Under the pieces are notes generated by a model. That model worked only from the letters and a program-made list of their open reading frames with translations. It searched no databases and was not told where the DNA came from. The translations under genes were made by a program, and so were the position numbers. Positions 40,843 to 61,898 of a stretch of 64,000 nucleotides of DNA are shown piece after piece; position 1 is the first letter of the stretch, and each line of letters begins with the position of its first letter. The stretch lies in IMG/VR virus record IMGVR_UViG_3300008448_000001, positions 62,001-126,000 of that record. One strand, 5' to 3'.

Positions 40843-42807
40843 ATGGCATTAGAAACAACTGTAGGCCAGATTCTAGTAAACGACGTGTTACCGGAGGAAC
40901 TACGCGACTACAGCCGTACTTTGGACAAGTCGGCACTTAGCTCGTTGCTCAAGGATGTCGCGAGAAAGCATCCCGAGAAGTACAGGGACATCTCCTTTCA
41001 GCTCAATCAGATAGGCCGACATTCGGCACAGGAGCAGGGCGGTTTGTCTTTCGGGGCCAGGCACCTTCGAAAGAGTAAGGCAGCTGCCGCCATTCAGGAC
41101 AGGATAAAGGGTGAGTTGTTTGGCATTCTTGCCGACGACAATTTAACCGACCAGCAACGCACAGACAAAATTGTACGCGTGGTAGGTCGTGAAAGTTCTG
41201 CGCAACAGCGTGCAGTACTGGACGAGGCCGTGAAAGAAGGCAATCCTTTAGGCCTACAAGTTCTCTCGGGGTCTCGGGGTAAGCCGATGAACCTTGCCAG
41301 CTTGCTAGCCGCCGACATGCTTTACTCGGATCACCGCGACGAAGTCATACCGGTACCTGTGCTTAGAAGTTACAGCCAAGGGTTGACGCCAGCGGAGTAT
41401 TGGGCAGGCACATACGGGGCCCGCCGAGGTATTATTGCCACGAAGTTTGCTACGCAGGAAGCAGGATTTTTGTCGAAACAGCTCAATCAAGCCGGGCACA
41501 GGCTTGTTGTCGTCGACGAAGAAAGCGAGGATGAGAATCCTGGTTTGCGGGGTTTGATCGTCGATACCGATGATATGGATAACGAAGGAGCTTTGCTTGC
41601 CCAGGACACCGGTCCGTTTCACCGCAACACTCCCCTCACCCCGAAAATACTCAAGCAGCTTAAGCGACTCGGCAAGGATCGGATTCTGGTTCGCTCTCCG
41701 CTTATTGGAGGTTCACCCGAGGGTGGCGTTTATGCGAGAGATGTCGGCGTACGTGAGAAGGGCCTCCTTCCAGGCCGGGGCGAGCAAGTAGGTTTACAGG
41801 CCGCCCAGGCGCTCAGCGAACCGATTAGTCAGGGCCAGCTTTCTGCCAAGCACTCCGGGGGTGTGGCAGGGCAAGAAAAAGCTGTTGGTGGTTTTCAATA
41901 CATCAACCAACTAATTCAAACACCTAAAAAAATGCAAGGCGGTGCGGCACATTCTACTGTCGACGGCGTTGTTCAGCGGATTGAACCAGCACCTGCCGGA
42001 GGTAACTACGTCACGGTCGGTGGCGAGCGGCATTATGTGAACGCGGGCTATGAACTCAAGGTCAAGCGAGGCGACGACGTAGAAGCCGGTGACATGCTAA
42101 GCGAAGGCATCCCAAATCCGGCGATTATCACGAAGTACAAGGGTGTAGGCGAGGGTCGTCGCTATTTCGTGCAGGAGTTCAAAAAGGCGATGTCTTCCAG
42201 TGGCATGCTCGGGCATCGGCGGAACATTGAGCTGCTTGCAAGAGGTTTGATAAATCACGTGCGTCTTACCGAGGAAGTCGGTGACCATGTCGAAGACGAT
42301 ATCGTACCGTACACGACACTTGAACACACTTACAAGCCACGCGACGGTTTTCAAGCGTTGGCTCCCAAAAAGGCGGTGGGTAAATACCTGGAAAGGCCTG
42401 TTTTGCATTACACGATAGGCACTAAAGTTCGCCCGTCCATGTTAAAAGATTTTGACGATTTCGGCGTGAGCTCGCTGGAAGTCCATGACGCTCCTCCGCC
42501 TTTCGAGTCGCACATGGTTCGTGGGATGTACCAGCTGCAGCACGATCCGGACTGGCTAACGCAGATGTACGGGTCGGGTCTAAAAGAAAGCCTGCTGGAA
42601 TCTACGGCACGCGGGGCGACTAGCGAAGAACGCGGGTCTAGCTTTGTTCCAAGCTTGGCGACAGGGACGGATTTCGGCGACGTCCCGAATCGAGTTGTCA
42701 TACAACCCAAGGCACCGTACGCTTTGCCGGACGTACCGATACCTGATATACCAGAAGTTAAGGATAGTCTCATATCGTCAAAAAGTCTCACACCGAGACT
42801 CCTGTAA
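40843..42807 (+). CDS. rpoC: RNA polymerase beta' C-terminal chain (bridge helix, trigger loop)
   Basis: TTVGQ, SGSRG, GLTPAEYW…GARRGIIATKFATQEAGFLSKQL (bridge helix), GEQVGLQAAQALSEPISQ…KHSGG (trigger loop), RRNIELL. Confidence 0.92.
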   Translation: MALETTVGQILVNDVLPEELRDYSRTLDKSALSSLLKDVARKHPEKYRDISFQLNQIGRHSAQEQGGLSFGARHLRKSKAAAAIQDRIKGELFGILADDNLTDQQRTDKIVRVVGRESSAQQRAVLDEAVKEGNPLGLQVLSGSRGKPMNLASLLAADMLYSDHRDEVIPVPVLRSYSQGLTPAEYWAGTYGARRGIIATKFATQEAGFLSKQLNQAGHRLVVVDEESEDENPGLRGLIVDTDDMDNEGALLAQDTGPFHRNTPLTPKILKQLKRLGKDRILVRSPLIGGSPEGGVYARDVGVREKGLLPGRGEQVGLQAAQALSEPISQGQLSAKHSGGVAGQEKAVGGFQYINQLIQTPKKMQGGAAHSTVDGVVQRIEPAPAGGNYVTVGGERHYVNAGYELKVKRGDDVEAGDMLSEGIPNPAIITKYKGVGEGRRYFVQEFKKAMSSSGMLGHRRNIELLARGLINHVRLTEEVGDHVEDDIVPYTTLEHTYKPRDGFQALAPKKAVGKYLERPVLHYTIGTKVRPSMLKDFDDFGVSSLEVHDAPPPFESHMVRGMYQLQHDPDWLTQMYGSGLKESLLESTARGATSEERGSSFVPSLATGTDFGDVPNRVVIQPKAPYALPDVPIPDIPEVKDSLISSKSLTPRLL

Positions 42808-43132: not shown

Positions 43133-45646
43133 ATGACGACGATCAAAAAGGCGAGTATTGGCGGCAGTGGCGGAGAGACTGAGTTTGAGCAGGCTTTCTC
43201 CAGTTTGGCCTATGCTTATTTGCGAGACAAGGCACCGCGACTGCTGGATCACATGATCGGCTTTCAGCTCGTTGACCGAAATGATGACAACACGAAGGCG
43301 ATGGGTGTTTTCGGCTTTCAGTTGGGGTCGCAATGGCTTTATGCTCCCGTGTTCTTCTTGAACGGTGACCTTAAAGGCCACGAGCTCCTTTACATCAAGA
43401 ACAACGATTCGTTTGTTCCGATGAAGGAGAACTGGATCAATTACATCATGAGCCGTAAGCCGCACATTCTTGGCGAGTCGTCGGCTTCCAAGCTGCGAGA
43501 TCTCGGGGGTGTATATCCCGACGTCCGCACGCTGTCTATTCCGCCTTCCATCGGTGGCGGCAAGCGAGCTAGCGACAGCTACAGGGTGAAGCAACTGCCC
43601 AAGGCTGCCTTTGATTCGGTCTTACCGTTACTTGCTGCTTTCAAGACGCAGGCCGCCAGCTCCTTGTTCAAGATCGCCGGAGGCTCACTTAAAGGTCGCA
43701 AGCTCGATCAGTCCGCCGTCGTTGCTGAGCCGTTTAAGGTGGCTTTCGCTAAAACGGCTGCTGCGTTTGACATGAACACGGTTCTGCCGCAAAGTTCGGA
43801 GCTGCTGTTCAAAGCTTATGCTGTCGCTGAAAAGTATCCCTTGGTTAAATCCGCTTTTAACCGTTTTTACGGTGACGACTGCTTTATGCGTTGGGGTTTG
43901 GCGTGCAAGCAAAACGCCAAGCAAGCTTCGCAAAGCATCGTCAAATCGTCGGCAGCTAAGCCGTCTTCTCTTAGCGGTATGCGACTGATCCCTGACTCCC
44001 AGGGCGAAACCGTGGATCACGTCAAGGCTGGTAACCTTCGGCTTTACACCGCCGAGTCGGGTATGGCGAACCGTGTACCGGAGCTTGACGACGCTGAGCG
44101 TGAACGTTTATTGAATGACACCATGCTTATCGTCGACCATCGAAAGGGTATTCAGGTCAGCCGAACGTACAACACGCAAATCGAGCAGAAGCTTACGAAT
44201 CCTTCCGAGACGTCGCTTTACCGCGTCTTGGAGAAGCCTGGCAAGTTCAGCAAAATGCTCGTTTTGACTCACGGCAGCAGCAATCGTGGCCGCGAGCCTT
44301 TTGTGGTTGTTATCCGGTTGGGCGAAGGGGGCGAGTCGCGCAATTGGATTAGCACGCACGCGACGAATGTTTTTGCGGATCAGATAAGCGAAAGGGACGA
44401 GTGGGATTCCTGGTTTGAGTCCTTGGCAGACGCCAGTTCGCTTTCCGAAAACGGTGTTTACGTTGGTTTGGATGCAACAGGCTCGGCCACTGTTCCGTTT
44501 ACTGTGCAGGAGTCGCTGGGTGACGGTAACTATCGCGTGAACTTTCACACGCATGTTCGTTACGACAACGATCGAGGCTCGACTATGCCTCGCCTTCTCA
44601 AGGTGACCGATCCGTACACGATGGATGGCTACAACCAGCCTAGCACTTACAATGCGTTGCTTTGCGTGGACAAAGAAAACAAACGCGGTACAAAACTCAG
44701 GGCAATCGCGGGTGAGTTGCGTGTCCCAGCCGGCTTTAAATTTATGAAGCTGCCAAGTTCTGACGATAGCGGCTGCGGCTGTGGCTCGTGCGAACCGGCG
44801 GATAAAGACAGTCCGATACAGTTGGGTAGCATCGATGACATTCAGTTGCTGATTCACGAAAAGACGGCCCGGCTCAAGGTTTTCAATAACGGGACGGATG
44901 TCTTTATTGACTCGGTCCTTGGCAAGCACAGCTTTTCAAAACGTGCAGCTTTGTGGGATCTTGTCAGCGTCCACGGTATGCGGGAAGACGTTTCGCGGGA
45001 GATTCTCAAGCAAGCGGAATCACGCGGCAGTGCTGTTTACCGCATAGAGTATGCTCCCGGCTACGGTACGCAAAAAAAGGCGTATCCTAACCACAGCGTA
45101 TTGGCGGGTGGTCCCGATGCACCTGTGTATGACGACTTGGCAGACGAGAGAAGCACGGAGCAATACGGTCCGAGAACCTCGGCAAACACGCAATACGCAG
45201 GTAACGCGGTTTATCGTTTGAACCACATGAGTGCGGACCAGACTGATCCGGGAGTCTGGGATCCTTGGCAAAACTACGAGGCCCAGGACTTCGGTACTTC
45301 CATGCAGGTGGCCCAACAAGCCGGAGCGCAAGGGCAAAAGGAAGTCTTTGATACGACGATGATTTCCGGCATGCTGAAATCTGTTCGGCAAGACTCGCTT
45401 GTCGAACGGCACTTGTCGCCGCTTGTCGAATCGCTTGATTCGCTTGGGCGTTTGCTGATGAACTTTTACTGGCACGGTGAAGAGTTTGAAGACCGTTACG
45501 GCAAGGCGGATATGCCCGAGCTGGAAGATAGTCTTCGTAACGCGTTTGAGGCTATCGGTGACATCACTTTGTTCCTCAAAGAGAAGTCGGTAGAATCACC
45601 GTTTGACGAAGGAGATGTGAACTTGGACGAGCTTTCTAGGAACTAG
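43133..45646 (+). CDS. Large head-module protein
   Basis: 837 aa with many K-x-A motifs, located in the head operon. Confidence 0.7.
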   Translation: MTTIKKASIGGSGGETEFEQAFSSLAYAYLRDKAPRLLDHMIGFQLVDRNDDNTKAMGVFGFQLGSQWLYAPVFFLNGDLKGHELLYIKNNDSFVPMKENWINYIMSRKPHILGESSASKLRDLGGVYPDVRTLSIPPSIGGGKRASDSYRVKQLPKAAFDSVLPLLAAFKTQAASSLFKIAGGSLKGRKLDQSAVVAEPFKVAFAKTAAAFDMNTVLPQSSELLFKAYAVAEKYPLVKSAFNRFYGDDCFMRWGLACKQNAKQASQSIVKSSAAKPSSLSGMRLIPDSQGETVDHVKAGNLRLYTAESGMANRVPELDDAERERLLNDTMLIVDHRKGIQVSRTYNTQIEQKLTNPSETSLYRVLEKPGKFSKMLVLTHGSSNRGREPFVVVIRLGEGGESRNWISTHATNVFADQISERDEWDSWFESLADASSLSENGVYVGLDATGSATVPFTVQESLGDGNYRVNFHTHVRYDNDRGSTMPRLLKVTDPYTMDGYNQPSTYNALLCVDKENKRGTKLRAIAGELRVPAGFKFMKLPSSDDSGCGCGSCEPADKDSPIQLGSIDDIQLLIHEKTARLKVFNNGTDVFIDSVLGKHSFSKRAALWDLVSVHGMREDVSREILKQAESRGSAVYRIEYAPGYGTQKKAYPNHSVLAGGPDAPVYDDLADERSTEQYGPRTSANTQYAGNAVYRLNHMSADQTDPGVWDPWQNYEAQDFGTSMQVAQQAGAQGQKEVFDTTMISGMLKSVRQDSLVERHLSPLVESLDSLGRLLMNFYWHGEEFEDRYGKADMPELEDSLRNAFEAIGDITLFLKEKSVESPFDEGDVNLDELSRN

Positions 45647-46331: not shown

Positions 46332-47339
46332 TTGAGTAGAACTTACAACGATATCCGGTTGGCCGACCCTTTCTTGCAACCATTTTGGCGGCACGAGCGG
46401 GTTCTTTCCATGTTGGCGGCGTGGCCACCGGAGCGATGCAAACGCTTTGACGACCAGTGGATTCAAGGTTACCGTTCGTATCTTTTCACCTGGAACAAGG
46501 GCGGCTCCAGGCGTACTTCGCTTTTGTATGACAATCCCGGGTTGTACTACGCTCACAACATGTTTGTAAACCGACTTAATGATCCGGAGATGTCGTTGAT
46601 CATTGAAGCCAGGCTACTTTCGGGTATGTCTTACGAGGCGATTGCCGAAGAAAACAAGACCATACCCGAGACGATTCAATGGTACGAAAAGCTTTTCTTT
46701 AACGTCAAAGAGTTTCTTCGACATCACGATTGGATTTTACGCAACGTGTTGGTACCCGCGTCGGATCGTTTCGTAGACGTTGAAAATGAGCAGGACAGCG
46801 ACAAACGACCCAGGTTCGAGATAAAGCCTCATTTCGATATGACGCTTAAATTTTTCGCTTATTACGGTGGTCCTGTTCTTTGCGACTTTATGCTCAGCGG
46901 ATTCAAGCGCGGAGTTAAGGTTGAGCGACTCGATGACGTTGAGCCTTGGCTGGACAGTCAGTGGTCCAACCAGATACGCCGCAAGAGCGCACAGGCCGCA
47001 GGGCAGTTCCGGGTAAACAACTTTAACGTGATGGAACTGTTCGTCGTACACGCTAAGCTCATCGAGATTCAGCAACGCGTCGACGACAAGCAGACTCGCC
47101 ACAACGAATTCGAGAAGCACATTAACGCCATGTTGTCCGAAATGCCGTGGGTTGTCGGCGATGAGGGCGAAAAGCTATATGCTGAAACACCTTTGGGCCT
47201 GTATGATAGACGGGCAGCTGAGCTGGATGGCTCTGAGGTTATGACAGTAGGTGCTGGCGGAAAAATCGGTACTGACCTGAAAGACGTAGACGAAAACATA
47301 TTCCGTCGCACGGAGACAAAAGATGGAAAACCTAAATAG
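46332..47339 (+). CDS. Hypothetical protein
   Basis: 335-aa ORF, TTG start. Confidence 0.7.
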   Translation: MSRTYNDIRLADPFLQPFWRHERVLSMLAAWPPERCKRFDDQWIQGYRSYLFTWNKGGSRRTSLLYDNPGLYYAHNMFVNRLNDPEMSLIIEARLLSGMSYEAIAEENKTIPETIQWYEKLFFNVKEFLRHHDWILRNVLVPASDRFVDVENEQDSDKRPRFEIKPHFDMTLKFFAYYGGPVLCDFMLSGFKRGVKVERLDDVEPWLDSQWSNQIRRKSAQAAGQFRVNNFNVMELFVVHAKLIEIQQRVDDKQTRHNEFEKHINAMLSEMPWVVGDEGEKLYAETPLGLYDRRAAELDGSEVMTVGAGGKIGTDLKDVDENIFRRTETKDGKPK

Positions 47340-48630
47340 GCAGGACGAAGAGCTGCTGATGGCAGGCGTCAAGCAAGCGGTAGCCCTGGTGGACGATCGG
47401 GGTCTTACGCCGAATGATGCCTTGCACAAGGTTGCTCAAGACCTGGGTTTTACGCCGGGTTTTCTTAAAGCAGCGTGCAACGCTTTCAACACTGGGCGAC
47501 AGCTTGCACAGTGGGAGGCCAACTCCAGTGTCCTGGACAAGCTTGCGGATTTCCCTTTGGCGGACTACTCGGAAGTGCATGACCGGATTTGGGGAAGCAC
47601 CAAGGAGAAGGTGGCACACGTGTCGACAACGTCTCCCAAGTTTCGAAGCTATGCAGACAAGCACAGTTTGCTAAAAGCGGATTTAAAGTTCACTGAGAAA
47701 GTCGCTGCCGAGTTGCCAGCCACTGCACCAGACGCCGGGATCAAGAAGGCCTTCGACGCTAAAGACTACCAACAACGGCTTATGCGCGAAGCTAACCGTG
47801 AGAAGGTTGCAGCGGAAGACCAAATGAATCTTAAGCTGCATTTACTGGTTTCTTACTTTAAAAAATCGGCTTACGACCGTTTGCCACTTGCGCAAGTGGA
47901 ACATGCTGCCGGAATCTATTACGGTGCAGCTGGTAACTCGCTTATGCAGCATGTCGCCTCACACTTCCCGAACGAGAAGAAAGCGTCAGACCATAAACCC
48001 ACGTGGTCCGGCTTCCGGGCTGTAGCGGAGCGGGGTGCGGCACCGTACACTTTGATCGACGCATGCATCAAGCAAGCGGAAGAGCTTATTTTGGCTGAAG
48101 AAAAGCTTGCCAAGCATGTCGCTGCGGCAGCTAAAGCCACGCGTTTTGCGGACGATCTGTACGCCAAACTGCGGCCCGAGGTCACGAAGCAAGCCAACCT
48201 GTCTTCGATTATCGGCGGCGTTGCCGGAGGTTTCGGCATGGGGGCTGCGAAAAACCTGGGGGAGTCGGTTGCAGAGGGTGGTAATTCCGCTCTCGAAAGC
48301 GAGATTCAAAATTTAGACAGCCCTGATCATTTGAACGAACTACGCAAAATTCGGGCGCAAACCGCTCTCACCCAGATGATGAGCGACCCGGAAAACCCTG
48401 TAAGCGAATACGAGCCTGATCAGGTTCTCAACGCGTACAATGAGCTAGTACAGCTTTCTCCTCGTTTAGCGGACCAACCTTCTGCCCTTGGCCCTTTGTT
48501 GCGTAAGCGGCTTATGGGCAACACTGAACCTTTTGAGATTGGCGAGGCGATCAAGCTCGAGGAAGGTTTACGCCGCACACAAAGTACTCCAACCCAAATG
48601 ATGCGAAATGAAGCCAGTATCCTTAGCTAA
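47323..48630 (+). CDS. Head-module protein (K-x-A rich)
   Basis: EKVA (3 times), KKSA, EKKA, TKQA. Glycine-zipper segment. Confidence 0.7.
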   Translation: MENLNRQDEELLMAGVKQAVALVDDRGLTPNDALHKVAQDLGFTPGFLKAACNAFNTGRQLAQWEANSSVLDKLADFPLADYSEVHDRIWGSTKEKVAHVSTTSPKFRSYADKHSLLKADLKFTEKVAAELPATAPDAGIKKAFDAKDYQQRLMREANREKVAAEDQMNLKLHLLVSYFKKSAYDRLPLAQVEHAAGIYYGAAGNSLMQHVASHFPNEKKASDHKPTWSGFRAVAERGAAPYTLIDACIKQAEELILAEEKLAKHVAAAAKATRFADDLYAKLRPEVTKQANLSSIIGGVAGGFGMGAAKNLGESVAEGGNSALESEIQNLDSPDHLNELRKIRAQTALTQMMSDPENPVSEYEPDQVLNAYNELVQLSPRLADQPSALGPLLRKRLMGNTEPFEIGEAIKLEEGLRRTQSTPTQMMRNEASILS

Positions 48631-49788: not shown

Positions 49789-51267
49789 ATGATTAAATTT
49801 GTATCGCCGTCAGGCTGGGAATTCGACAGGCAAATTGTTGTGCCCGTTAAAGTCAGTAGCCGAGGGCTTATCGGCAACGACAGGCGTGACTTCTTAAAGA
49901 CTGCGAGTCACGCCTTTTTGCCGCACGTCGACAATTACAAGTTTGCAAGCGACGAGATACCTGTGCATTTGATTGCACTCGGGGCGAGCGAAGCCTACGG
50001 TCCGAATCGCAACGGTGACGGTTTCAAGGAAGCGACTTGCAAAAAGTATCATGACACCTTTGTCAAGCTTGCTAAGTTTTTTCGAAACCACAAGAACAAG
50101 CCGGAACGCGGTGATCCTTTTTATGGGTATGTTAAAGCTTCTGCCTACAACGACGACATGCGACGGGTTGAGTTGCTTTGTGCGTTGAACGCCAACAAGG
50201 CGGCAGCGGATCGTAACGGTGGCCTGGTCGCCGACACCGAAGTGGAGAAGATTGCAAGGGGCGAAGACTTTCCGGTGAGCATGGCTTGTCGCGTACCGAA
50301 TGACATTTGTTCGTTCTGCAAGCACGCCGCAAAAACCCGGGACGAGTATTGCACCAGTGAGAAATGCGCCGCAGGCGGTTGCAGACACAACCTTTCGCGG
50401 TTGGTGAAAGTTGGCGGTGACTTACATCACCTGCACGTTGACAACCCTGACCCGGCTTGGTTCGACATTTCGCGTGTCTTTAGGCCAGCCGACCGTATCG
50501 CTTATGGTGCCAAGGCGGACTACTTTACAAAAGCGGCCTCTGACGATGGGATTTTTGATCTCCAAGATTGCATCAAAATGTCTTGTAACTCCACGGCACC
50601 GCTTGACGTGATCTTGTACCAGTCCGGGCAGCACGGTTTCTGGTCCGAAAAGACAGCATCTCAAATTCGACTCGGTTACGCCCTGGCTACCGCCGAGAAG
50701 ACTTCGGCGTTGCCTGACACCTTGTTGGCTGGTATAGCCACGCAAGCTTTTCCGATCGAGAAGCTTGCGGCTTTCGGTACCCCTACCTGTGACCGCCAGC
50801 TGGCGGCCTTGGCAGACCGTTGCATATTTTTAAGCCTTGCAGATTACGGCAGGCTTTCTGCTCGGTCGACGCATGTTAAAGCTGCGCAGAATGTGTTGCC
50901 GTCGATTTACGGTACGATGGCCACTGACGAGTCGTTGCCACTACGGATAGAGCAGTCGCCTTCGGTGCTGATTGATAAGGTTGCTACTTTTAAGGACGAT
51001 CTCCTGGCGACTTCTCTCGTCAAAGATTTTTCTTTTTACAAGGAATCTGTTTATCTCCGAAGCATGTTGGGCTGTTGTCGCGAGTCTCGAATACCTAAAA
51101 TCGGAAAACATGAGAAGCTTGCGGCGTGTAATTTTGAGAGTAAGGCGTTAGCTGAAGACTACGCTATGTATAAGCTGGCAGCACTTTGGCGGTCAGCCGC
51201 TCACAATCCAAACTTCCCGTTGACAGTGCGGTTCGCCGTCTGTCAGAATCAACTTTTTAGCGTGTAA
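49789..51267 (+). CDS. Prohead maturation protease (HK97/assemblin-like fold) with Cys-rich insertion
   Basis: NRNGDGF, candidate catalytic His in FRNHKN, Ser in PVSMAC, and DISRVFRPAD (E/D-x-S-x-V-x-x-PA-like). Lies directly upstream of scaffold-like and capsid genes. Confidence 0.7.
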   Translation: MIKFVSPSGWEFDRQIVVPVKVSSRGLIGNDRRDFLKTASHAFLPHVDNYKFASDEIPVHLIALGASEAYGPNRNGDGFKEATCKKYHDTFVKLAKFFRNHKNKPERGDPFYGYVKASAYNDDMRRVELLCALNANKAAADRNGGLVADTEVEKIARGEDFPVSMACRVPNDICSFCKHAAKTRDEYCTSEKCAAGGCRHNLSRLVKVGGDLHHLHVDNPDPAWFDISRVFRPADRIAYGAKADYFTKAASDDGIFDLQDCIKMSCNSTAPLDVILYQSGQHGFWSEKTASQIRLGYALATAEKTSALPDTLLAGIATQAFPIEKLAAFGTPTCDRQLAALADRCIFLSLADYGRLSARSTHVKAAQNVLPSIYGTMATDESLPLRIEQSPSVLIDKVATFKDDLLATSLVKDFSFYKESVYLRSMLGCCRESRIPKIGKHEKLAACNFESKALAEDYAMYKLAALWRSAAHNPNFPLTVRFAVCQNQLFSV

Positions 51268-51296
51268 ACGGTTAACCGTAGATCAAGGAGTATTCG

Positions 51297-52571
51297 ATGT
51301 CCAAATCTGCAAATTCGATCAATACAATCGACAAATTCTTGCAGGCTGTGAAGAGTAACGTCAAGTTTGCTGCGGAGGCTCACACCGAGCCCGGCAGCAT
51401 TGGTGGTGCTACGACTCACCCTGTCAAAGACGTTGACGATTCCACCGAGGAAGCTTCCGAAGGTTCTCGCTCTGCCGAGAACACCGCTGACGTCAAATCC
51501 GACCAAGGCAAGCCTTCTGTCGACAGCACTTCCGAAAACGTAGCGGCCAAGAAGGCTGCCGCCAAGCGAGCTGTCGACGGCAAATCCGAGGACGGTTCGG
51601 TCAACCCGCCTGGAACTGCTGCGGGCGATCAGCTTCAAATCGGCACGAAGAAGCAACCTACCGGCGAAGACCCTGCGGTTGAAACTGGCTCAGCGAAGGC
51701 TGAAAAAGAAGACGCTGCAGGTGGCCGGCTGGGCAACACGAGTCACCCTGCTCGCACAAACAACGGTGAACTCGACGGCTACAAGTATGCTTCGATGTCC
51801 GTTGAAAAGCTTGCCAGCTTGACGTCTCAACTTGGCAACAGTTTGCTGGCCGAGCTTGCTACAGTGCAAAAGCAAGCAGAGTTGACCGGGGCACAGTCAA
51901 AGCTTGACGTGAACGGTAACGGCAAAATCGAAGGATCGGACCTGGCTTCTTTGCGAAACGACGAAGGTTCCGATGACGACGAGAAGTCTGCCGTAGACGC
52001 CGCCTCTCAAGCAGGCTGGGAACTTGCCGGTTTGCTTAGCGGAAAATTTGACAAGCAAGCCGCAGACGCACTCGTGGCGCAGTCGCTTGAATCGATCATC
52101 AAGGTGGCTGCCGACGATGCGGACAAGGTTGCCGCATTCTTGCGACAGTACGGGGCAGAGCTTGACAAGCAAGCCATGGGTGAGATGCCTGCCGGCATTG
52201 ACCCTGCCGCCTTGGCTGGCGGTGGAGCCCCAGACATGGGCGCAGCAATGGGCGCCGGTGGCCCTCCGCCTGAGGGTGCCGGTGGTGGCTCGCCCGACAT
52301 GGAACAGCTTTTAGCCATCCTCGAACAACTCGGAATTACTCCGGAAGACCTTGAAGCGGCCATGGCTGCTGAAGGCGGTGCCGGTGGTGGTGGCGGCGGT
52401 GGTATGCCTCCCGGCGCACCAGCAGGTGCCCCGCCAGAGGAACCCAAAGCTGAAGAAGCACCGGGAATGGAAGTCGAAGCACGGGCCAAAGCCGCTGCCG
52501 CCAAAAAGGGCGCATCTGACAGTCGCGTCCGCGACTACATCCAAGAGGTCTTGAGCCGTTCGCGGTCCTAA
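51297..52571 (+). CDS. Scaffold/prohead core-like protein
   Basis: Acidic, low complexity, about 10 K-x-A motifs, EF-hand-like DVNGNGKIEGSD. Sits after the protease. Confidence 0.65.
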   Translation: MSKSANSINTIDKFLQAVKSNVKFAAEAHTEPGSIGGATTHPVKDVDDSTEEASEGSRSAENTADVKSDQGKPSVDSTSENVAAKKAAAKRAVDGKSEDGSVNPPGTAAGDQLQIGTKKQPTGEDPAVETGSAKAEKEDAAGGRLGNTSHPARTNNGELDGYKYASMSVEKLASLTSQLGNSLLAELATVQKQAELTGAQSKLDVNGNGKIEGSDLASLRNDEGSDDDEKSAVDAASQAGWELAGLLSGKFDKQAADALVAQSLESIIKVAADDADKVAAFLRQYGAELDKQAMGEMPAGIDPAALAGGGAPDMGAAMGAGGPPPEGAGGGSPDMEQLLAILEQLGITPEDLEAAMAAEGGAGGGGGGGMPPGAPAGAPPEEPKAEEAPGMEVEARAKAAAAKKGASDSRVRDYIQEVLSRSRS

Positions 52572-52583
52572 TTTCAATTTCAA
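52567..52583 (+). promoter_or_regulatory. Intergenic motif CCTAATTTCAATTTCAA, copy 1
   Basis: Identical 17-mer at 53611-53627. Confidence 0.6.
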
Positions 52584-52601
52584 AACTGGAGAAAATCCCT
52601 T

Positions 52602-53030
52602 ATGAACACCAAAATTGCATCCATGATGATCGAGTATATCGCCGCAAGTTCGGCGCTTACCGATCGTCTGCTTGGCGATACTCAACGTTATCGTGCTCAA
52701 GAGAAGGCGGCAGCTGCCAAGCAGTCGTCCACGCTTGAGACGATGTTGCGAAACGACTGTGTTGGGCCAAACGAGAAGCAGGCTGCTGCTTCGATGTTGG
52801 CCGACCACGGTCAAACTCTTGACCTGCTCGTCAACGCTGTTAACAAGATGGCCGAATACCGTGGGCGATCCGAGAAGATCGCAAGCGACCTTGGCCGTCC
52901 TGTGGCAGACCCTGCAGTGAAAACTGCAAGTTACGACAGCCTCAACGACCCGTTTGTTGGGCGTCATTCTTCGCAGAAGAAGGCTTCCGACCTTGCTCTC
53001 CTGCGTGTATTACGTGCACCAGGTTCCTAA
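52602..53030 (+). CDS. Small scaffold-like protein
   Basis: Helical. 7 of 9 Lys are in K-x-A. Confidence 0.7.
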   Translation: MNTKIASMMIEYIAASSALTDRLLGDTQRYRAQEKAAAAKQSSTLETMLRNDCVGPNEKQAAASMLADHGQTLDLLVNAVNKMAEYRGRSEKIASDLGRPVADPAVKTASYDSLNDPFVGRHSSQKKASDLALLRVLRAPGS

Positions 53031-53072
53031 TTCCGCATTTAGACGTCAAATCCAAATCAGGAGGATTTACAA

Positions 53073-53615
53073 ATGGCTGCTCCACGGCAAATGACCGCTA
53101 ACACTCTCAACGCGTTGAAAGGCTGGCCGCAGATGAACGCGGTTGACTACACCGCGAAGTTTTCTTCGACCATCCCTGCGGGCGACTTGCCCGTCTTGGC
53201 GGGTTCCGTTGTTTCGCTCAATTCCAGCGGCGAATTCATTCTCGGTGTGGGTAACACCAGGGTGATGCCGATGTTTTTGTTCAACAACTCGGACGATCCC
53301 GACGTCACCAACGACGGCGGCGACGCGTCTACCACTCGGGGTGTTTTCATTCCGATGTCGCCAACGGGCCAAGCAATGGCTCTCGTTGCTATTGGCGCGT
53401 ATGAGCTTGTCAGCACGGCTTATGTCGACGCTGCGTATTCAATCAACCAACCTTTGACCGCCAACCTTTCCGGCGGTGCAAACCCAGGCAAGTTGCGGGC
53501 TGGCACCATGTACACCAACATGATTGTTGGCCTTGTGTCTCGTGGCGTTGTTGACAATGGCTACGGTCAGAATGCTTTGGCTTTCTGGCCTTGCACAGTC
53601 TTCCCAACGGCCTAA
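53073..53615 (+). CDS. Probable head decoration/cement protein
   Basis: Beta-rich 180 aa directly before the MCP. Strong SD AGGAGG. Confidence 0.6.
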   Translation: MAAPRQMTANTLNALKGWPQMNAVDYTAKFSSTIPAGDLPVLAGSVVSLNSSGEFILGVGNTRVMPMFLFNNSDDPDVTNDGGDASTTRGVFIPMSPTGQAMALVAIGAYELVSTAYVDAAYSINQPLTANLSGGANPGKLRAGTMYTNMIVGLVSRGVVDNGYGQNALAFWPCTVFPTA

Positions 53616-53627
53616 TTTCAATTTCAA
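53611..53627 (+). promoter_or_regulatory. Intergenic motif CCTAATTTCAATTTCAA, copy 2
   Basis: Identical to 52567-52583. Confidence 0.6.
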
Positions 53628-53664
53628 CGAGTCTTAGACTCGATTAACCATGGAGGTTACGTTA

Positions 53665-54612
53665 ATGACTGCTACTACTGAAATGACTCGCGAAGAAAGC
53701 TTGTTGGCGAGCCAGGCGATTTTTGAAAAACTTTCTTCTGCGGATCCGTCGATGGCGAAGCAAGCCGTTGACGCCGTCAACGACTTCACCCGTACCAAAA
53801 TGCGGGAAGACGGCTTCTTCCGGCGAATCATGCCACCTATTCCGATCAGCAACGACGATCTCGATCGTCAAGTTGACACGGATAAGCCGGTTAAGATCGT
53901 CGACAAAGAACCGAACAGCCCGGCTGCGGTTTCGATTCCTTTTGCCACGCTGCCTACCAGCTTGTACATCAAGGGTGACCGTTACAAGGTTACCTTTGAC
54001 CGCATCACAACTCCGAAGTTCACCAAGGACGTCGACGAGTTGCGAACCTGGTACATGGACATTCGTCAAGTCCTCAGCGACAACGCGATTAAGGACATGT
54101 TGGCAGAAGAAGACGGCAAGTTCCTAAGCGCGGTCAACACCGCACTTGTCGGGCCGGATCTCATTGTGCCGACTTCCGGCGTTGCCCAGTACCAGACAAT
54201 CTCGGGCGGTATCACGCGGGACACCCTTTGGGACAGTCTCAAGATTTTGCCCGGAACCCCTTCGAACCTCGAAGTGCACTGCGTTCTTCTCAACAACATC
54301 ACCATCAAAGACGTTGCGAAATTCACTCGTAACGAAATGGGTGGTGACTTGTCGGAAGAAATCATGCGTAACGGCTGGACGCTCAGCGAATGCATGGGCG
54401 TTAAGTGGGTTATCACGATCAAGAAGGGGCTGGTTCCAACGAACACCATGTATCACTTTGCCGATCCGAAGTTCATCGGCAAGAGCTACATGTTGGAAGA
54501 CACCACGATGTACATTCGTCGTGAAGCTTACTTCATCGAGTTTTTCGCTTACGAATCGCTCGGTGGAACCATCGGTCACACTTCCGGTCTTGCCCGAGTT
54601 GACTTCGAGTAA
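53665..54612 (+). CDS. Probable major capsid protein
   Basis: About 315 aa, SD GGAGG. Follows protease-scaffold-decoration genes and is followed by a terminator. HK97-like order of elements (long helix …IKDMLAEEDGKFL, terminal beta strands). Confidence 0.75.
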   Translation: MTATTEMTREESLLASQAIFEKLSSADPSMAKQAVDAVNDFTRTKMREDGFFRRIMPPIPISNDDLDRQVDTDKPVKIVDKEPNSPAAVSIPFATLPTSLYIKGDRYKVTFDRITTPKFTKDVDELRTWYMDIRQVLSDNAIKDMLAEEDGKFLSAVNTALVGPDLIVPTSGVAQYQTISGGITRDTLWDSLKILPGTPSNLEVHCVLLNNITIKDVAKFTRNEMGGDLSEEIMRNGWTLSECMGVKWVITIKKGLVPTNTMYHFADPKFIGKSYMLEDTTMYIRREAYFIEFFAYESLGGTIGHTSGLARVDFE

Positions 54613-54627
54613 CAGTTGATCTACTAT

Positions 54628-54657
54628 AAGGCCCCTGGGTTTTCCCGGGGGCCTTTG
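54628..54657 (+). terminator. Hairpin/terminator after the MCP
   Basis: AAGGCCCCTGGG-TTTT-CCCGGGGGCCTT then TGT. Confidence 0.7.
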
Positions 54658-54676
54658 TGGGTCAAGGAGTATTTCA

Positions 54677-54952
54677 ATGCCTGCAGCTTTTTCTGATCCG
54701 TACACCGACGTTGGGACTACCCAGCGTCCGCCTTTTTCGCAAGTTTCTCAAGCCGTAAACGTCACCAATCCTCGCGATTTGGGCGGCGATCGAAGCTACC
54801 AGGGAACTTTGTCGCAGACGCTACGATCGGCGAGCTACTCAGCTCAACAACGTGCGGCTAAACCTTTTCCGCGAAGCCAAAACATGACACCGGGTTATGA
54901 TCCTTACGCTGTTGGCGGCGGGGTCGAGACCTACCTGGACAACGCAAACTAA
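54677..54952 (+). CDS. Small hypothetical protein
   Basis: SD AAGGAG. Confidence 0.65.
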   Translation: MPAAFSDPYTDVGTTQRPPFSQVSQAVNVTNPRDLGGDRSYQGTLSQTLRSASYSAQQRAAKPFPRSQNMTPGYDPYAVGGGVETYLDNAN

Positions 54953-54976
54953 CCTCAATTCCGTTCGGAGTATAGA

Positions 54977-55375
54977 ATGTCGAGAGAAAATCAAGCAACG
55001 CTGCCGGATCCGTCAGCAGCTTACAACACTTTGTTCGACAACGTGCATGCTCAAGTGTTCTTTGGCAAACTCGCAAGCTACGGTATTCAGCCGACTACCG
55101 AAAAAGAAGCTGGCGATTTGCTCGAGATCGCAGCTCAGCTTCGCAATGTTGACAACCCCGTCAAGCAAGCTTCCACTCGCAGCCGTTTCGGTGACGCCGC
55201 ATCGGCTTTGAACTCGGTAGTAAGTTCGACGCCTTACGGGCAAAAGCAAGCTGCAGTTGCCGAGGATCACGCAATCAAACAAGCAGCGGCCACCTTGGCC
55301 CAGGACCCAGCCGTGTACAACGCGGTTTTGGCTCTTCGGGTCCAGGAAGCTGCCGCTCTCGCGGGTAACACCTAA
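54977..55375 (+). CDS. Small internal head protein candidate
   Basis: All 5 Lys are in K-x-A (KLA, KEA, KQA three times). Confidence 0.7.
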   Translation: MSRENQATLPDPSAAYNTLFDNVHAQVFFGKLASYGIQPTTEKEAGDLLEIAAQLRNVDNPVKQASTRSRFGDAASALNSVVSSTPYGQKQAAVAEDHAIKQAAATLAQDPAVYNAVLALRVQEAAALAGNT

Positions 55376-56041: not shown

Positions 56042-57271
56042 ATGAAGCTGAGCATTTTTACACCAACGCACGCACCCACCTATCTTCCAGAGGTGTACAA
56101 CTCTTTGAAGCTGCAGACGCTGCAGCAATGGGAGTGGTTGATACTTCCAAACGGTAAAGGTACCGCGATACCGGCGGCGATACGTGCAGATAGTCGCGTG
56201 AAAGTTGTGGAGAGCGCGGGCGATGTCTATAACGTAGGTGCGATGAAAAGGAAGCTTTGCATGGCGGCAAGTGGTGACGCCTTCGTGGAGCTGGATCACG
56301 ACGATCTGCTGGTGCCGGGTGATACTCTGGCAGCGATTCAGCGCAAGTTTGAAGCGGGAGCTGGTTTCGTTTACTCGGACAACGCGGTATTCAGATTCTC
56401 TCCGAAAGCTTCGCAAGATAGATTCCGCCCTTTCACCTGGTCTCCGCAACACGGCTGGGAAAGCTACGACATTAAGATCTACGGCAGACACCTGCAAGCC
56501 AGTCGTTGTTTCGAGGTCACGCCCAGATCATTGTCGGAGATTTACTACTGCCCGGACCACATTCGCTGCTGGGAACGCTCGGTTTATATGCAGGCCGGAG
56601 GGCACAACGCGGACTTACCGGTTTGTGACGACCACGAGTTGATGATAAAAACGTATTTAACGGGCTCACCTTTCGTGCACACGGAAGGTTGTCATTACCT
56701 TTACCGCTTGTTCGATAGCAACACGATTCACGCCAGAGCCGATCAGATCCGGAAGATTAGTCGAAATTTTCGGACAATCTATTTGCAACGTCTGATAAAG
56801 GAATGGCTTCGTCGGCACAACCTGGAGGAGCTTGATTTCTCGGTCCTTTTGAAGCAAGGCTGGGACGCAGAAAAGCACCTTTTACAGGGTTTTGGCGAGA
56901 ACACTTTCGGTCACATCGTAGCCGATACCGAGCTGCAAAAGCTGTCCGGTTTTCAAGTTCGCGAGTTTATGAACGCCGCATATTGGGCTTTGGTTCCGGG
57001 TGGGTATTTGACTATCATAGTGCCTGAGGTTCACTCTGGCATGGGCTACGCGGATGTCGAATGGAAATCGCATTTCAGTGCCACCAGTATGTACCCGTAT
57101 ACCCGTAAAGATTTCGCCCGGTCGAACGGAAATATACGCTGCCGCTTTCAGGAGATAAACTGCACTGAGCTTTATCCCTCGGAGTGGCACAAGAACAATG
57201 GTTTCAAGTTTTTGCGGTTTGAGCTTGTGGCTTTGAAAGGACAGCGGCATCCGGGTCTTCAACACATTTAA
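56042..57271 (+). CDS. GT2 glycosyltransferase with C-terminal truncated methyltransferase-like domain
   Basis: LSIFTPT, ELDHDD, CDDHEL. C-terminal WALVPGG.L.I.VP. Confidence 0.85.
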
Positions 57272-57285: not shown

Positions 57286-58824
57286 ATGGCAAACTATCTA
57301 CCGCAACCTTATTCGGACCAGCTGACTGAGATCGACCTGCTGACCACGGATGACTTTGGTCGCTTTCTTTTGACGTTCGAAGACGGTGATTCCGTTTGCG
57401 ATTACATCGGCGCAGCTAAAGGGACGACCATCGGCGCTACGGGTGCCACGGGCGTCGCTGGACCACAAGGTGCCACGGGCTTAACGGGTGCTCCAGGTTC
57501 TACGGGCTTAACCGGTGTTCAGGGGGCGACAGGTGTCGCCGGACCCCAAGGTGCTACCGGTTCTACAGGCGCCCAAGGTACGCAAGGTTCTACGGGCGCA
57601 ACCGGTGTCGGCGGACCGCCGGGTGATACCGGGGCTACTGGCATTACGGGCCCGCAAGGTGCCACAGGTTTAACTGGTTCGCAGGGATCCACCGGGGCAA
57701 CAGGTGCTGGTGGAGCTCAAGGGGCTACAGGTTTAACGGGTTCGCAGGGTTCTACTGGGGCAACAGGTGCTGGTGGAGCTCAAGGGGCTACAGGCTTAAC
57801 GGGTTCGCAGGGTTCTACTGGGGCGACAGGCGTCGCAGGTCCGCAGGGTGCCACCGGTATAGTCGGTGCCCAAGGGTCAACCGGTGCAACGGGCGCGGCG
57901 GGTGACCGCTATACGACTACGTCGGCAACGTCAAACACCATTGGTCTTGGGTCGAAAACGTTTACGGTTGCCAGCGGTTTGGCACTGAGCACGGGGCAGT
58001 CTGTCGTCGCTGCCTTTGATGGTGCGAATCGGATGGAAGGCACAGTCACGAGTTACATCGGTACAACGTTGATCGTCAACGTCACTTCCACTTTAGGTTC
58101 TGGAACGTATGCCTCTTGGAGCATAAGCTTGTCGGGTGCACCTGGGCCGCAAGGTTCGACCGGTGCAACGGGTGTCACAGGCCTAACAGGTGCTCAAGGG
58201 GCCACAGGCTTGCCCGGCGATCAGGGCGCGACAGGTGCAACAGGCGTTGCCGGTCCGCAAGGTGCTACAGGGTTAACTGGGGGCCAGGGCGCGACCGGAC
58301 CCGCCGGACCAAACAACGTATCGGGCACCACTACCACCACGTTGGTGGGCCTACTGGCTGGCAACGGCACCAACGTGTTAGTGGTCGGGATCGGTACAGG
58401 TTTGCAGTACTCAGACGACACGTTAGCCGTTTCGGGTGTTGTGCTGACCACCACGAATCAAAGCGTGGCTGGTGTTAAGACGTTTGCGGATACCTTGGAT
58501 TTGAGCGTACGAACGCTTACCGATTCCGCCACCATTGCCGTTGACGCCGCAACGTCCAACAAATTCCACATAACGTTGGGCGGTAACCGAACCCTAGCAA
58601 ACCCTACCAACGCGGTAGACGGGCGTTTGGTGATCTTCCGACTCCAACAGGACGCCACAGGCAACCGCGTGGTGGCATGGGGCAGCGACTACCGATTCGG
58701 CGGTGACCTAGCCGCCGCCAACGTGGTGTTGTCCACCGCCGCGAACATTACCGACCGAATCGCGTTCGAGTACCACGCCGCCGATGGAAAATGGGATTGC
58801 GTTAGCTACGTGAAGGGCAGTTAA
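57286..58824 (+). CDS. Collagen-like fibre protein
   Basis: Two long Gly-X-Y blocks rich in GAT/GST, with a globular C-terminal domain. Confidence 0.9.
57430..58310 (+). repeat. Collagen Gly-X-Y coding repeats, including a near-perfect 63-bp tandem unit around 57655-57830
   Basis: Direct reading. Confidence 0.85.
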
Positions 58825-60809: not shown

Positions 60810-61898
60810 ATGCCGTTCAGATTTCACGTTCTAGGATTGCCGCATACCGTTTCTAACCGCGATTACGTTGCTTGCGCATACACGCAAAAAGTTGTAAAGT
60901 TCGCTGAAATGATGCGACCGCACGGGCACCACATTATTCATTACGGCCACGCGGATTCTAATCTTGCGTGCGACGAGCATGTAACGGTTACGACAAACGA
61001 AGACCTGGAAATTGCGTACGGAAGCTACGATTGGCGTAAAAACTTTTTCAAGTTCAACACGGAAGATCACGCTTACCAAACGTTCTATCGCAACGCGATC
61101 ACAGAAATAGCTAAACGTAAAAAGCCGCTGGACTTCATCCTGCCGTTCTGGGGAGCTGGCGTACGCCCGGTCTGCGACGCACACTCCGACCTTATCTGCG
61201 TGGAACCTGGTATAGGTTACGCGGATGGACACTGGGCGCGTTGGAAAATTTTCGAGTCTTATGCCATTTACCATGCTTACTGCGGCATGGCGGGCGTTCG
61301 CAATTGCAAGCAAGATTGGTACGAGGTAGTGATCCCGAACTATTTCGACTTAAATGATTTCGAATACAGCGACAAAAAGCAGGATTACTTTTTGTACCTC
61401 GGTCGCGTTTACGAGGGCAAAGGCGTACACATTGCAATTCAAGTTGCCCAGAAGCTCGGCATTAAACTTGTGATTGCAGGGCAAAAGGATCCGTCTTTCG
61501 AGCTTCCAGCTTCGGTCGAATACGTTGGATACGCTGATTCCGAGACCCGCAAAAAGCTAATGCGAGACGCGAAAGCCAGCTTTGTGGCAAGTCAGTACAT
61601 CGAGCCCTTTGGCGGGGTTCAGATCGAAAATTTGCTATCCGGTACTCCTACGATTACCACGGACTGGGGTGCGTTTACGGAGAACAATCTGCACGGCGTA
61701 ACGGGCTATCGCTGCAGAACTTTTGCCGACTTTGTCGACGCTGTTCGCAACATCGATCGGATCAAACCTGAAAATTGCAGGAAGTTCGGTGAACAGTTCT
61801 CTTTGGAAAAGATTGCGCCAAGGTACAACAAGTATTTTAAAGACGTGATGAACGTCTACACGGGCAAGGAAGGCTGGTACAAGCTCGACGACGCGTAG
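60810..61898 (+). CDS. GT4-type (GT-B) glycosyltransferase
   Basis: [20 protein letters not shown]…SGTP.ITTDWG. Confidence 0.9.

What the first reader, a model, noticed from the sequence alone, without database searches (positions are those of the whole stretch)
49789..55375. A Lys-x-Ala cleavage code for head maturation
Seen: K-x-A is pervasive in head-module proteins: 5 of 5 Lys in ORF 54977, 7 of 9 in ORF 52602, about 10 sites in ORF 51297, many in 43133, 47323 and the protease's own tail, and one (AKQA) about 34 residues into the probable MCP. Established: T4 gp21 and phiKZ gp175 cleave head proteins at short motifs ending in Glu. Inference: the protease at 49789 cleaves after K-x-A, a different specificity, so the motif predicts which proteins enter the capsid.
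Basis: partly seen in the sequence, partly recalled or inferred. Interest (0 to 1): 0.75.

Follow-up and report, generated by a model that had tools for sequence, protein, structure and literature searches.

The report
Lys-x-Ala cleavage code of a phage head protease
A 205-kb uncultured phage and its many relatives load a few head-assembly proteins with the short motif Lys-x-Ala, most likely the cut site of their own T4-like head protease, so the processed proteins can be read from sequence; no cleavage has been measured.

Summary
Of about 240 ORFs in the 204,794-bp phage genome, seven exceed composition shuffles at p<=0.0004. Six lie in the head module (window ORFs 43133, 47323, 49789, 51297, 52602, 54977). 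One lies outside the window, next to the terminase. Pooled, there are 84 K-x-A against 26 expected (z=11), the top of 1,600 gapped residue pairs. A-x-K, K-A and R-x-A sit at expectation, and so does the rest of the genome.

K-x-A is the top pair in 79 of 79 related loci, down to 28% protease identity, including cultured Salmonella phage Arash. The capsid protein keeps one site, K37-x-A39, in 98% of homologues and otherwise avoids the motif.

Cleavage after Ala is inferred, not measured. The motif marks processed or degraded proteins, not everything that enters the capsid. I rate it a new variant of a known kind.

The parts
49789..51267 (+). Prohead protease precursor, 492 aa: an N-terminal gp21-like catalytic domain (aa 1-250) and a C-terminal extension of about 240 aa. 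It carries 15 K-x-A sites.
50089..50091 (+). His101 codon, the candidate catalytic His, in the motif R-N-H-K-N-K.
   Evidence: It is invariant in 28 diverse homologues. It lines up with N84-H85 of T4 gp21. In homologue P0128 an intein is inserted directly after it.
50278..50280 (+). Ser164 codon, the candidate catalytic Ser, in the motif V-S-M-A-C.
   Evidence: It is invariant. It lines up with V139-S140 of T4 gp21. In homologue P0138 an intein is inserted after S-M-A.
50464..50466 (+). Asp226 codon, a candidate third triad residue, in the motif F-D-I-S.
   Evidence: It is invariant. It corresponds by motif order to G-V-D168 of T4 gp21. The hhalign link is weak and offset by two residues. This assignment is an inference.
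50530..50538 (+). K248-A249-A250 (context T-K-A-A/S), the predicted self-release site at the end of the catalytic domain.
   Evidence: K-x-A is present in 100% of 63 homologues at this column. It lies in the low-confidence linker 234-250 of the model.
43133..45646 (+). Large head-module protein of 837 aa and unknown fold, with 12 K-x-A sites, 8 of them in the first 263 residues.
   Evidence: K-x-A is 12 against 4.1 expected, p=0.0004. The family ratio is 2.48 over 82 orthologues. The site at K5 is conserved in 91%. The model has pTM 0.38 and no PDB match, so it is not shown to be a portal.
47323..48630 (+). Head-module protein of 435 aa with 13 K-x-A sites, all in residues 1-291. The C-terminal 144 residues are free of the motif.
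   Evidence: K-x-A is 13 against 4.3 expected, p=0.0002. The family ratio is 2.70. Sites at K36, K73, K219 and K289 are conserved in 78-97%.
51297..52571 (+). Probable scaffold or core protein of 424 aa: acidic, Ala-rich, lying between the protease and the capsid protein. It carries 15 K-x-A sites.
   Evidence: K-x-A is 15 against 5.1 expected, p=0.0002. The family ratio is 2.24. A conserved site at K398 (68%) lies about 25 residues from the C-terminus. The scaffold role is inferred from position and composition only.
52602..53030 (+). Small head-module protein of 142 aa; 7 of its 9 Lys are in K-x-A.
   Evidence: K-x-A is 7 against 1.4 expected, p=0.0002. The family ratio is 3.33. If every site is cut, the fragments are 6-31 residues long.
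53650..54612 (+). Major capsid protein of 320 aa with a single K-x-A.
   Evidence: It is 29% identical to the Arash major capsid protein gp226 and matches the phage G major head protein. It also hits PHROG 2522, major head protein.
53758..53766 (+). K37-Q38-A39 of the capsid protein, the predicted propeptide cleavage site. The mature N-terminus would be Val40.
   Evidence: K-x-A is present at this column in 98% of 61 homologues, directly before the conserved block D-A-V-N-D-F-T-R. It aligns with K26-E27-A28 of Arash gp226. The rest of the protein is depleted of the motif: ratio 0.37, p=0.0017 on 18 non-redundant sequences.
54977..55375 (+). Small head-module protein of 132 aa; all 5 Lys are in K-x-A.
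   Evidence: K-x-A is 5 against 1.0 expected, p=0.0002. The family ratio is 3.19 over 61 orthologues. Sites at K31 and K63 are conserved in 84-92%.

Best explanation
ORF 49789 encodes a serine prohead protease with the T4 gp21 / herpesvirus assemblin fold. Its likely triad is His101, Ser164 and Asp226.

Inside the assembling prohead it recognises an extended peptide whose P3 is Lys and P1 is Ala, and it cuts after the Ala. The wider preferences are P5 Phe/Leu, P4 Glu or a beta-branched residue, P2 Gln, P1' Ser/Ala and P2' Asp.

The predicted consequences are as follows.
- One cut removes a propeptide of about 39 residues from the capsid protein.
- A cut at the fully conserved K248-x-A250 linker site frees the catalytic domain from its own C-terminal extension.
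- Many redundant sites reduce the scaffold or core proteins (51297, 52602, 54977, much of 43133 and 47323, a 394-aa protein encoded next to the terminase, and finally the protease itself) to short peptides that can leave the head before DNA is packaged.

Shown here: the motif statistics, their conservation across the lineage, avoidance of the motif in the mature shell protein, and the protease fold and motifs.

Inferred: that the motif is a cleavage site, which bond is cut, and what happens to the fragments.
For: Motif statistics.
- Seven of 240 ORFs are enriched at p<=0.0004, and six of them are adjacent in the head module.
- K-x-A is the top of 1,600 gapped pairs at z=11.3. Mirror and neighbouring patterns are flat, and the rest of the genome is at expectation.

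Conservation across the lineage.
- K-x-A is the top pair in 79 of 79 related loci, down to 28% protease identity.
- It is also the top pair in the head module of cultured phage Arash (44 against 19.7 expected) and is enriched in Vibrio phage D69.
- The same six gene families carry ratios of 2.2-3.3. Their neighbours carry 0.6-1.1.
- A few sites are fixed: capsid protein K37 at 98%, protease K248 at 100% and K37 at 98%, ORF 43133 K5 at 91%. Most sites move between lineages. Each protein has 4-14 sites, only 2-8 alignment columns are conserved, and 29-153 columns are used somewhere in a family. Density is therefore kept despite positional turnover.
- The mature capsid-protein body avoids the motif: ratio 0.37, p=0.0017.

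Flanking preferences.
- 3,564 sites show preferences from P5 to P2', with Pro and Gly excluded around the site.
- The 394-aa protein, which was not in the training set, has the same flanks (p=1e-6). Its family carries 4.0 times the expected K-x-A over 120 homologues.

Protease identity.
- The NRN, NH, VS and D motifs occur in the same order as in gp21.
- These residues are invariant.
- Inteins sit beside His101 and Ser164 in homologues.
- No Peptidase_S78 (HK97-type) or ClpP-type protease is detected in the complete genome; other protease families were not scanned.

Method control and grammar.
- The same statistic returns I-x-E at rank 1 and L-x-E at rank 3 in T4 gp67, gp68, gp21 and gp22.
- The related proteases of T4 and SPN3US/phiKZ cut after a P3-x-P1 motif. 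SPN3US shows P4 Val and P1' Ser preferences and multiple cuts within propeptides (PMC10052503; PMC5694885).
Against: - No protein-level data exist. The Arash virion proteome was tryptic, reports no N-termini, and lists the K-x-A-rich proteins gp220-gp225 among 116 detected proteins.
- Eight motif copies lie inside the folded catalytic domain, some at conserved helices. Their conservation could be structural.
- The Pfam S77, S80 and S78 models do not detect the protein.
- The catalytic residues were not checked in three dimensions, and the hhalign link to a single gp21 sequence is negligible.
- The protease-peptide complex prediction gave no answer.
- The loci are phylogenetically related, so the 79 of 79 result is not 79 independent trials.
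Confidence: 0.72

Rival explanations
1. K-x-A is recognised by the protease, but the cut is elsewhere, for example directly after Lys with Ala at P2'.
For: Only the motif is observed, not the bond. Lys is a common P1 residue for serine proteases. The statistics cannot by themselves locate the scissile bond.
Against: All characterised members of this fold specify P3 and P1 and cut after P1. T4 cuts after I/L-x-E and SPN3US after A-x-E. The HCMV protease assay substrate contains Asn-Ala-Ser-Ser, and cleavage at the Ala-Ser bond is taken from the earlier herpesvirus literature, not read here. The position after Ala prefers Ser/Ala and excludes Pro, Ile and Leu, as a P1' position would.
Confidence: 0.1
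2. K-x-A is a short linear binding or targeting motif, for example multivalent docking of core proteins onto the shell interior or onto each other, and not a cleavage site.
For: The motif is repeated many times in Ala-rich proteins that are probably helical or disordered. T4 uses short N-terminal capsid-targeting sequences. The Arash homologues are detectable in virion preparations.
Against: The single, 98% conserved copy in the capsid protein lies exactly at the propeptide-body junction. A 100% conserved copy lies in the linker after the catalytic domain. The mature capsid-protein body avoids the motif, which a binding motif would not require. T4 cleavage motifs give the same statistical signature.
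Confidence: 0.08
3. The motif is a by-product of composition or of helix-forming Ala/Lys-rich sequence, or of a DNA-level signal, and has no specific function.
For: The enriched proteins are Ala-rich (14-20% Ala) and several are predicted to be helical.
Against: Shuffles keep composition. A-x-K, K-A and K-xxx-A in the same proteins are at expectation, K-xx-A is only weakly raised (44 against 26.1 expected), and R-x-A is not enriched. The DNA pattern is in frame only and uses mixed codons. Density is maintained across lineages despite positional turnover. Non-substrate Ala-rich neighbours are not enriched.
Confidence: 0.03
4. K-x-A marks lysines for a post-translational modification or for a host protease, not for the phage protease.
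For: This cannot be excluded from sequence alone. Some phages use host proteases for head-protein trimming; this is known for Staphylococcus phage 80alpha and is stated from memory, not checked here.
Against: The motif is constant across phages with very different hosts (Salmonella, Vibrio, environmental) and travels with the phage protease gene. No modifying enzyme is evident in the module.
Confidence: 0.05

Closest known systems
T4 gp21 head maturation protease (MEROPS S77)
   Different: P3 is Lys and P1 is Ala, instead of Leu/Ile and Glu. The protein is 492 aa with a C-terminal extension of about 240 aa and a Cys-rich insert between Ser and Asp. Sequence identity is about 10%, and the Pfam S77 model does not detect it.
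phiKZ gp175 / SPN3US gp245 prohead proteases (MEROPS S80)
   Same: These are giant-phage proteases that cut after a three-residue motif (A-x-E) with secondary preferences at P4 and for Ser at P1'. They cut several times within long propeptides and undergo C-terminal autoprocessing.
   Different: Their motif ends in Glu. The S80 model does not hit. The capsid protein here is a small HK97-type protein of 320 aa, not the large phiKZ type.
Herpesvirus assemblin (MEROPS S21)
   Different: Herpesvirus P3 is hydrophobic (stated from memory) and its triad is Ser-His-His. Here P3 is Lys and the third residue looks like the Asp of the phage enzymes. The fold similarity is much weaker than to gp21.
Salmonella phage Arash gp222 and Vibrio phages D69, D148 and D181
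   Same: They are the only cultured relatives found: protease core 39-40% identical, capsid protein 29% identical, same gene order. K-x-A is the top pair in the Arash head module, and the capsid-protein site aligns.
   Different: Arash gp222 is annotated only as a structural protein. The Arash paper mentions neither a protease nor cleavage. Those genomes are about 181-188 kb.

Membership tests
gp21/assemblin-fold prohead serine proteases | The characteristic protease fold. | tested here: met
gp21/assemblin-fold prohead serine proteases | Conserved catalytic His and Ser (plus Asp in the phage enzymes), in that order. | tested here: met
   H101, S164 and D226 are invariant in 28 homologues down to about 35% identity. 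They sit in the same local motifs and order as H85, S140 and D168 of T4 gp21. Inteins lie beside H101 and S164. Their juxtaposition in three dimensions was not checked.
gp21/assemblin-fold prohead serine proteases | A match to the curated family models (Pfam S77, S80, S78). | tested here: not met
   The protein and 48 homologues give no hit. The six-frame genome scan with these models also gives no hit. By sequence it is a separate, undescribed family.
gp21/assemblin-fold prohead serine proteases | The gene lies in the head module next to the scaffold and capsid-protein genes. | tested here: met
   The order is protease 49789, Ala-rich acidic 51297, small proteins, capsid protein 53650. This order is conserved in L002-L085 and in Arash.
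gp21/assemblin-fold prohead serine proteases | Proteolytic activity on head proteins. | not testable with these tools
   This needs recombinant enzyme or virion N-terminomics.
Prohead-protease cleavage motif (as T4 I/L-x-E, phiKZ A/S/G-x-E) | The motif is over-represented in the scaffold, the core proteins and the protease itself. | tested here: met
   The T4 positive control gives the same signature.
Prohead-protease cleavage motif (as T4 I/L-x-E, phiKZ A/S/G-x-E) | A conserved site at the propeptide junction of the capsid protein, and avoidance in the mature shell. | tested here: met
   The site is 98% conserved. The mature body has ratio 0.37, p=0.0017.
Prohead-protease cleavage motif (as T4 I/L-x-E, phiKZ A/S/G-x-E) | Mature N-termini mapped to the motif. 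| not testable with these tools
   No N-terminal or semi-specific peptide data exist for any relative.
Herpesvirus assemblin (S21) | A Ser-His-His triad. | tested here: inconclusive
   The third conserved residue corresponds to the Asp of T4 gp21. H60 and H88 are nearly invariant, but their positions in the structure were not examined.

The most novel reading that the evidence does not exclude
A very large, mostly uncultured clade of phages of about 180-235 kb uses a prohead protease with strict Lys(P3)/Ala(P1) specificity. The clade holds more than 3,800 protease clusters at 50% identity. Its cultured members found here are Arash and the Vibrio phages D69, D148 and D181. This would be a third cleavage code for the gp21/assemblin fold, and one that shares P1 Ala and P1' Ser with herpesviruses. 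The motif is so dense and so exclusive that the whole processed head proteome, including substrates encoded far from the head module, can be read from sequence alone.
Probability: 0.65. Interest if true: 0.7.

Novelty: new variant of a known kind. Interest (0 to 1): 0.62.

Why it matters
Prohead proteases decide which proteins stay in a phage head. Their cleavage codes are known for only a few model phages, and the codes of the two compared here, T4 and phiKZ/SPN3US, end in Glu.

This work points to a different code in a protease family that current family models do not recognise. The code is supported across thousands of metagenomic relatives. It gives unannotated "orphan" phages such as Arash a protease, a capsid-protein maturation site and a list of likely scaffold or core proteins.

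It also offers a directly testable substrate rule. The P1 Ala / P1' Ser preference narrows the gap between phage and herpesvirus maturation proteases.

The pair-enrichment test recovered T4's code without prior knowledge. It could be applied to other phage clades.

Tried and rejected
- Pfam and PHROGs scans of the ten head-module proteins gave nothing for the protease.
- A profile search against PDB sequences gave no hit.
- hhalign of the family profile against a single T4 gp21 sequence gave only a 16-column match at probability 0.13.
- The complex prediction of the protease domain with the capsid-protein peptide 26-50 scored 0.00, and the tool states that this is no evidence either way.
- ORF 43133 was suspected to be the portal. 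Its model has pTM 0.38 and no PDB match, the Atlas search gave nothing, and Arash annotates a different gene as portal. It is left as unknown.
- The 744-aa and 394-aa proteins next to the terminase have no match in cultured phages.
- A DNA-level motif was rejected, and composition or helix bias was rejected.
- Bacillus phage G, whose gp19 is a fold relative of the protease, shows only a weak echo: K-x-A is second of the pairs scored, tied with the top pair at z 3.2, and its capsid protein has no site. It is not counted as support.
- Literature searches for K-x-A or Lys-x-Ala together with prohead or maturation protease found no prior description in the held library.
- The Arash supplement holds sequences only, with no peptide-level data, and no raw proteomics deposit is cited.


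Full report
**Context.** The window is bases 62001-126000 of a complete 204,794-bp viral record with direct terminal repeats. Almost all genes are on the plus strand. The region named in the finding is a head-assembly module. ORF 53650 is the major capsid protein: it is 29% identical to gp226 of Salmonella phage Arash, it matches the phage G major head protein, and it hits the PHROG for major head protein. Upstream lie ORFs 43133, 45654, 46332, 47323, 48608, 49789, 51297, 52602 and 53073. ORF 54977 follows.

**Checking the observation.** I called about 240 ORFs over the whole genome and compared each with 5,000 shuffles of its own residues.
- Seven ORFs reach p<=0.0004. They are window ORFs 43133 (12 sites against 4.1 expected), 47323 (13 against 4.3), 49789 (15 against 4.5), 51297 (15 against 5.1), 52602 (7 against 1.4) and 54977 (5 against 1.0), plus a 394-aa gene outside the window at genome 182513-183697 on the minus strand (17 against 5.7).
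- Pooled, K-x-A occurs 84 times against 26.2 expected (z=11.3). This is the highest of all 1,600 residue pairs at gaps 0-3; the next pair has z=4.2.
- In the same proteins A-x-K is 26, K-A 32, K-xxx-A 23 and R-x-A 12 (17.9 expected). K-x-G, K-x-S, K-x-T and K-x-V are at expectation.
- The remaining 233 ORFs have 304 sites against 295 expected.
- The DNA pattern occurs almost only in frame, and all four Ala codons are used, so this is a protein-level signal.
- Composition, helix bias and nucleotide motifs are therefore excluded.

**An extended motif.** Around 3,564 sites from the six families in related phages there are clear preferences: P5 Phe/Leu (3.1x and 2.2x), P4 Glu (3.2x) or Ile/Val/Thr, P2 Gln (3x), P1' Ser (2.8x) or Ala (2.1x), and P2' Asp (2.2x). 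Gly, Pro, Asp and Asn are strongly depleted at P2, and Pro, Ile and Leu are depleted at P1'. I built a flank matrix from those relatives. It separates the K-x-A copies in the enriched proteins from the 304 copies elsewhere in the genome. It also does so for the 394-aa protein, which has no homologue in the training set (mean 1.87 against -1.12, p=1e-6).

**Conservation across a large clade.**
- The protease candidate has 1,143 hits in the 90% identity protein collection and 3,829 cluster representatives at 50% identity. Most come from contigs of 170-236 kb.
- I fetched 80 viral loci, three ENA contigs, and the Arash and Vibrio D69 regions.
- K-x-A is the top-ranked pair in 79 of 79 loci with enough orthologues, down to 28% protease identity.
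- By family, the observed/expected ratios are 2.48 (43133-like), 2.70 (47323-like), 3.18 (protease), 2.24 (51297-like), 3.33 (52602-like) and 3.19 (54977-like).
- The interleaved neighbours have 0.72 (RNAP beta'-like), 0.73 (46332), 0.75 (53073), 1.14 (capsid protein, one site each), 0.61 (55387) and 0.92 (glycosyltransferase).
- In Arash the motif is again the top pair in the head module (44 against 19.7 expected), with contexts such as E-K-A-A-A and T-K-Q-A-S.
- The 394-aa family carries 1,702 sites against 425 expected over 120 homologues.

**Two classes of site.** A few positions are fixed: capsid protein K37 (98%), protease K37 (98%) and K248 (100%), ORF 43133 K5 (91%), and ORF 47323 K36 (97%). 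Most positions move between lineages. Proteins keep 4-14 sites each, but only 2-8 alignment columns are occupied in at least 60% of sequences, while 29-153 columns carry a site somewhere in a family. Density is therefore maintained through positional turnover. This argues for continuing selection and against simple inheritance. Conversely, the mature body of the capsid protein is depleted (ratio 0.37, p=0.0017 on 18 non-redundant sequences), as is the RNAP beta'-like protein (0.71, p=0.004). A-x-K is not depleted in either.

**The protease.**
- Pfam and PHROGs do not recognise ORF 49789.
- An AlphaFold model of residues 1-250, built on 26 diverse homologues, has pLDDT 80.7 and pTM 0.80.
- Foldseek against the PDB returns the three chains of the T4 gp21 structure 5JBL at probability 1.00. 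Everything else is near probability 0.1.
- The viral model library returns phage G gp19, proteins of phiRSL1 and PaBG, and dozens of entries named prohead protease.
- N73-R74-N75, H101, S164 and D226 are invariant. They sit in the same local motifs and order as N51-R52-N53, N84-H85, V139-S140 and D168 of gp21.
- In homologues, inteins interrupt the protein directly after His101, directly after Ser164-Met-Ala, and near Asn73. Inteins typically occupy active-site motifs.
- No Peptidase_S78 (HK97-type) or ClpP-type protease is found in the genome.
- I conclude that ORF 49789 is a gp21-like prohead protease of a sequence family not yet described. Its C-terminal extension of about 240 residues follows a disordered linker that holds the fully conserved K248-A-A250 site.

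**Why K-x-A is read as the cleavage site.**
1. The characterised enzymes of this fold recognise P3 and P1 and cut after P1. T4 cuts after I/L-x-E; one example is the removal of six residues from Alt at ITE-6. SPN3US and phiKZ cut after A-x-E, with a P4 Val and P1' Ser preference and several cuts within long propeptides. The HCMV protease assay substrate is built around Asn-Ala-Ser-Ser. Herpesvirus cleavage between Ala and Ser is taken from earlier literature that I could not read here.
2. The fixed sites are where processing is expected: at the propeptide junction of the capsid protein, after the catalytic domain, near the C-termini of the protease and of the putative scaffold, and 3-7 residues from the N-termini of ORFs 43133, 51297 and 52602.
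3. As a positive control, the same blind pair statistic applied to T4 gp67, gp68, gp21 and gp22 returns I-x-E at rank 1 and L-x-E at rank 3. Both the protease and the scaffold are enriched there, as they are here. K-x-A is not among the top pairs in T4 (12 against 7.1 expected).

**Predicted outcome.** The capsid protein would lose 39 residues and begin at Val40. ORFs 52602 and 54977 would be reduced to peptides of 6-33 residues. ORFs 43133 and 47323 would keep motif-free segments of 314, 187 and 144 residues. Arrangement by arrangement, this is the T4 picture of core degradation and propeptide removal. The layout of the protease precursor recalls the herpesvirus R and M sites.

**Limits.**
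- No cleavage has been measured.
- The Arash virion proteome was tryptic, lists 116 proteins including gp218 and gp220-226, and gives no N-termini or raw data.
- The bond cut, the third catalytic residue and the scaffold role of ORF 51297 are inferences.
- Several motif copies inside the folded protease domain may be conserved for structural reasons.
- The related loci are not independent samples.
- The complex prediction was uninformative.
- ORF 43133 has no recognisable fold and should not be called a portal.
It predicts which proteins are trimmed or destroyed there.

**Novelty.** Searches of the held literature found no description of a Lys-x-Ala specificity for a prohead protease. The Arash paper mentions no protease at all. 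The mechanism class is well known. The specificity, the unrecognised sequence family and its breadth are new. I rate it a new variant of a known kind and of moderate to high interest. The main explanation has confidence 0.72.

Noticed in passing
homologues P0128, P0138, P0159 and P0161 of window 49789-51267: Inteins (Hint plus LAGLIDADG domains) split the protease in many metagenomic homologues. They sit directly after His101, directly after Ser164-Met-Ala, and near Asn73. One protein carries two inteins.
   Followed up: partly
window 50308-50382 (protease residues 174-198): A Cys-rich insert (C174-x2-C177, C188, C193, C198) lies between the catalytic Ser and Asp, which looks like a zinc-binding knuckle. 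T4 gp21 has no such insert. Distant relatives keep three Cys plus a His.
   Followed up: no
genome 182513-183697, minus strand (outside the window; L086:6513-7697): A 394-aa protein beside the large terminase has the densest K-x-A load in the genome: 17 sites, and 4.0 times expectation across 120 homologues. It has a weak DUF6582 hit. It is probably a further protease substrate encoded away from the head module.
   Followed up: partly
window 40843-42807: An RNA polymerase beta'-like protein is encoded directly upstream of the head module (PF04998 in relatives). In Arash the beta and beta' subunits are among the most abundant proteins in virion preparations. This suggests a virion-packaged multisubunit RNAP. 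The family is mildly depleted of K-x-A.
   Followed up: partly
window 57286-58824: A 512-aa protein has long collagen-like Gly-x-y repeats and is probably a fibre. It is flanked by glycosyltransferase-like genes at 56042-57271 and 60810-61898 inside the structural region.
   Followed up: no
window 51297-52571, residues about 199-229 and 300-380: The putative scaffold has a weak EF-hand/dockerin-like acidic loop (D-V-N-G-N-G-K-I-E-G-S-D) and a long Gly/Pro/Ala-rich low-complexity stretch that is free of K-x-A.
   Followed up: no
L087 (Bacillus phage G, NC_023719 8000-30000): Phage G gp19, a fold relative of the protease, has 8 K-x-A against 2.4 expected, and gp21 has 7 against 2.8. Its capsid protein gp27 has none. 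This is a weak and inconclusive echo of the motif in a distant jumbo phage.
   Followed up: partly
window 43133-45646: An 837-aa head-module protein has a well-predicted N-terminal beta domain and a C-terminal helical bundle, but no match to any solved structure. Its Arash counterpart gp218 is abundant in virion preparations.
   Followed up: partly
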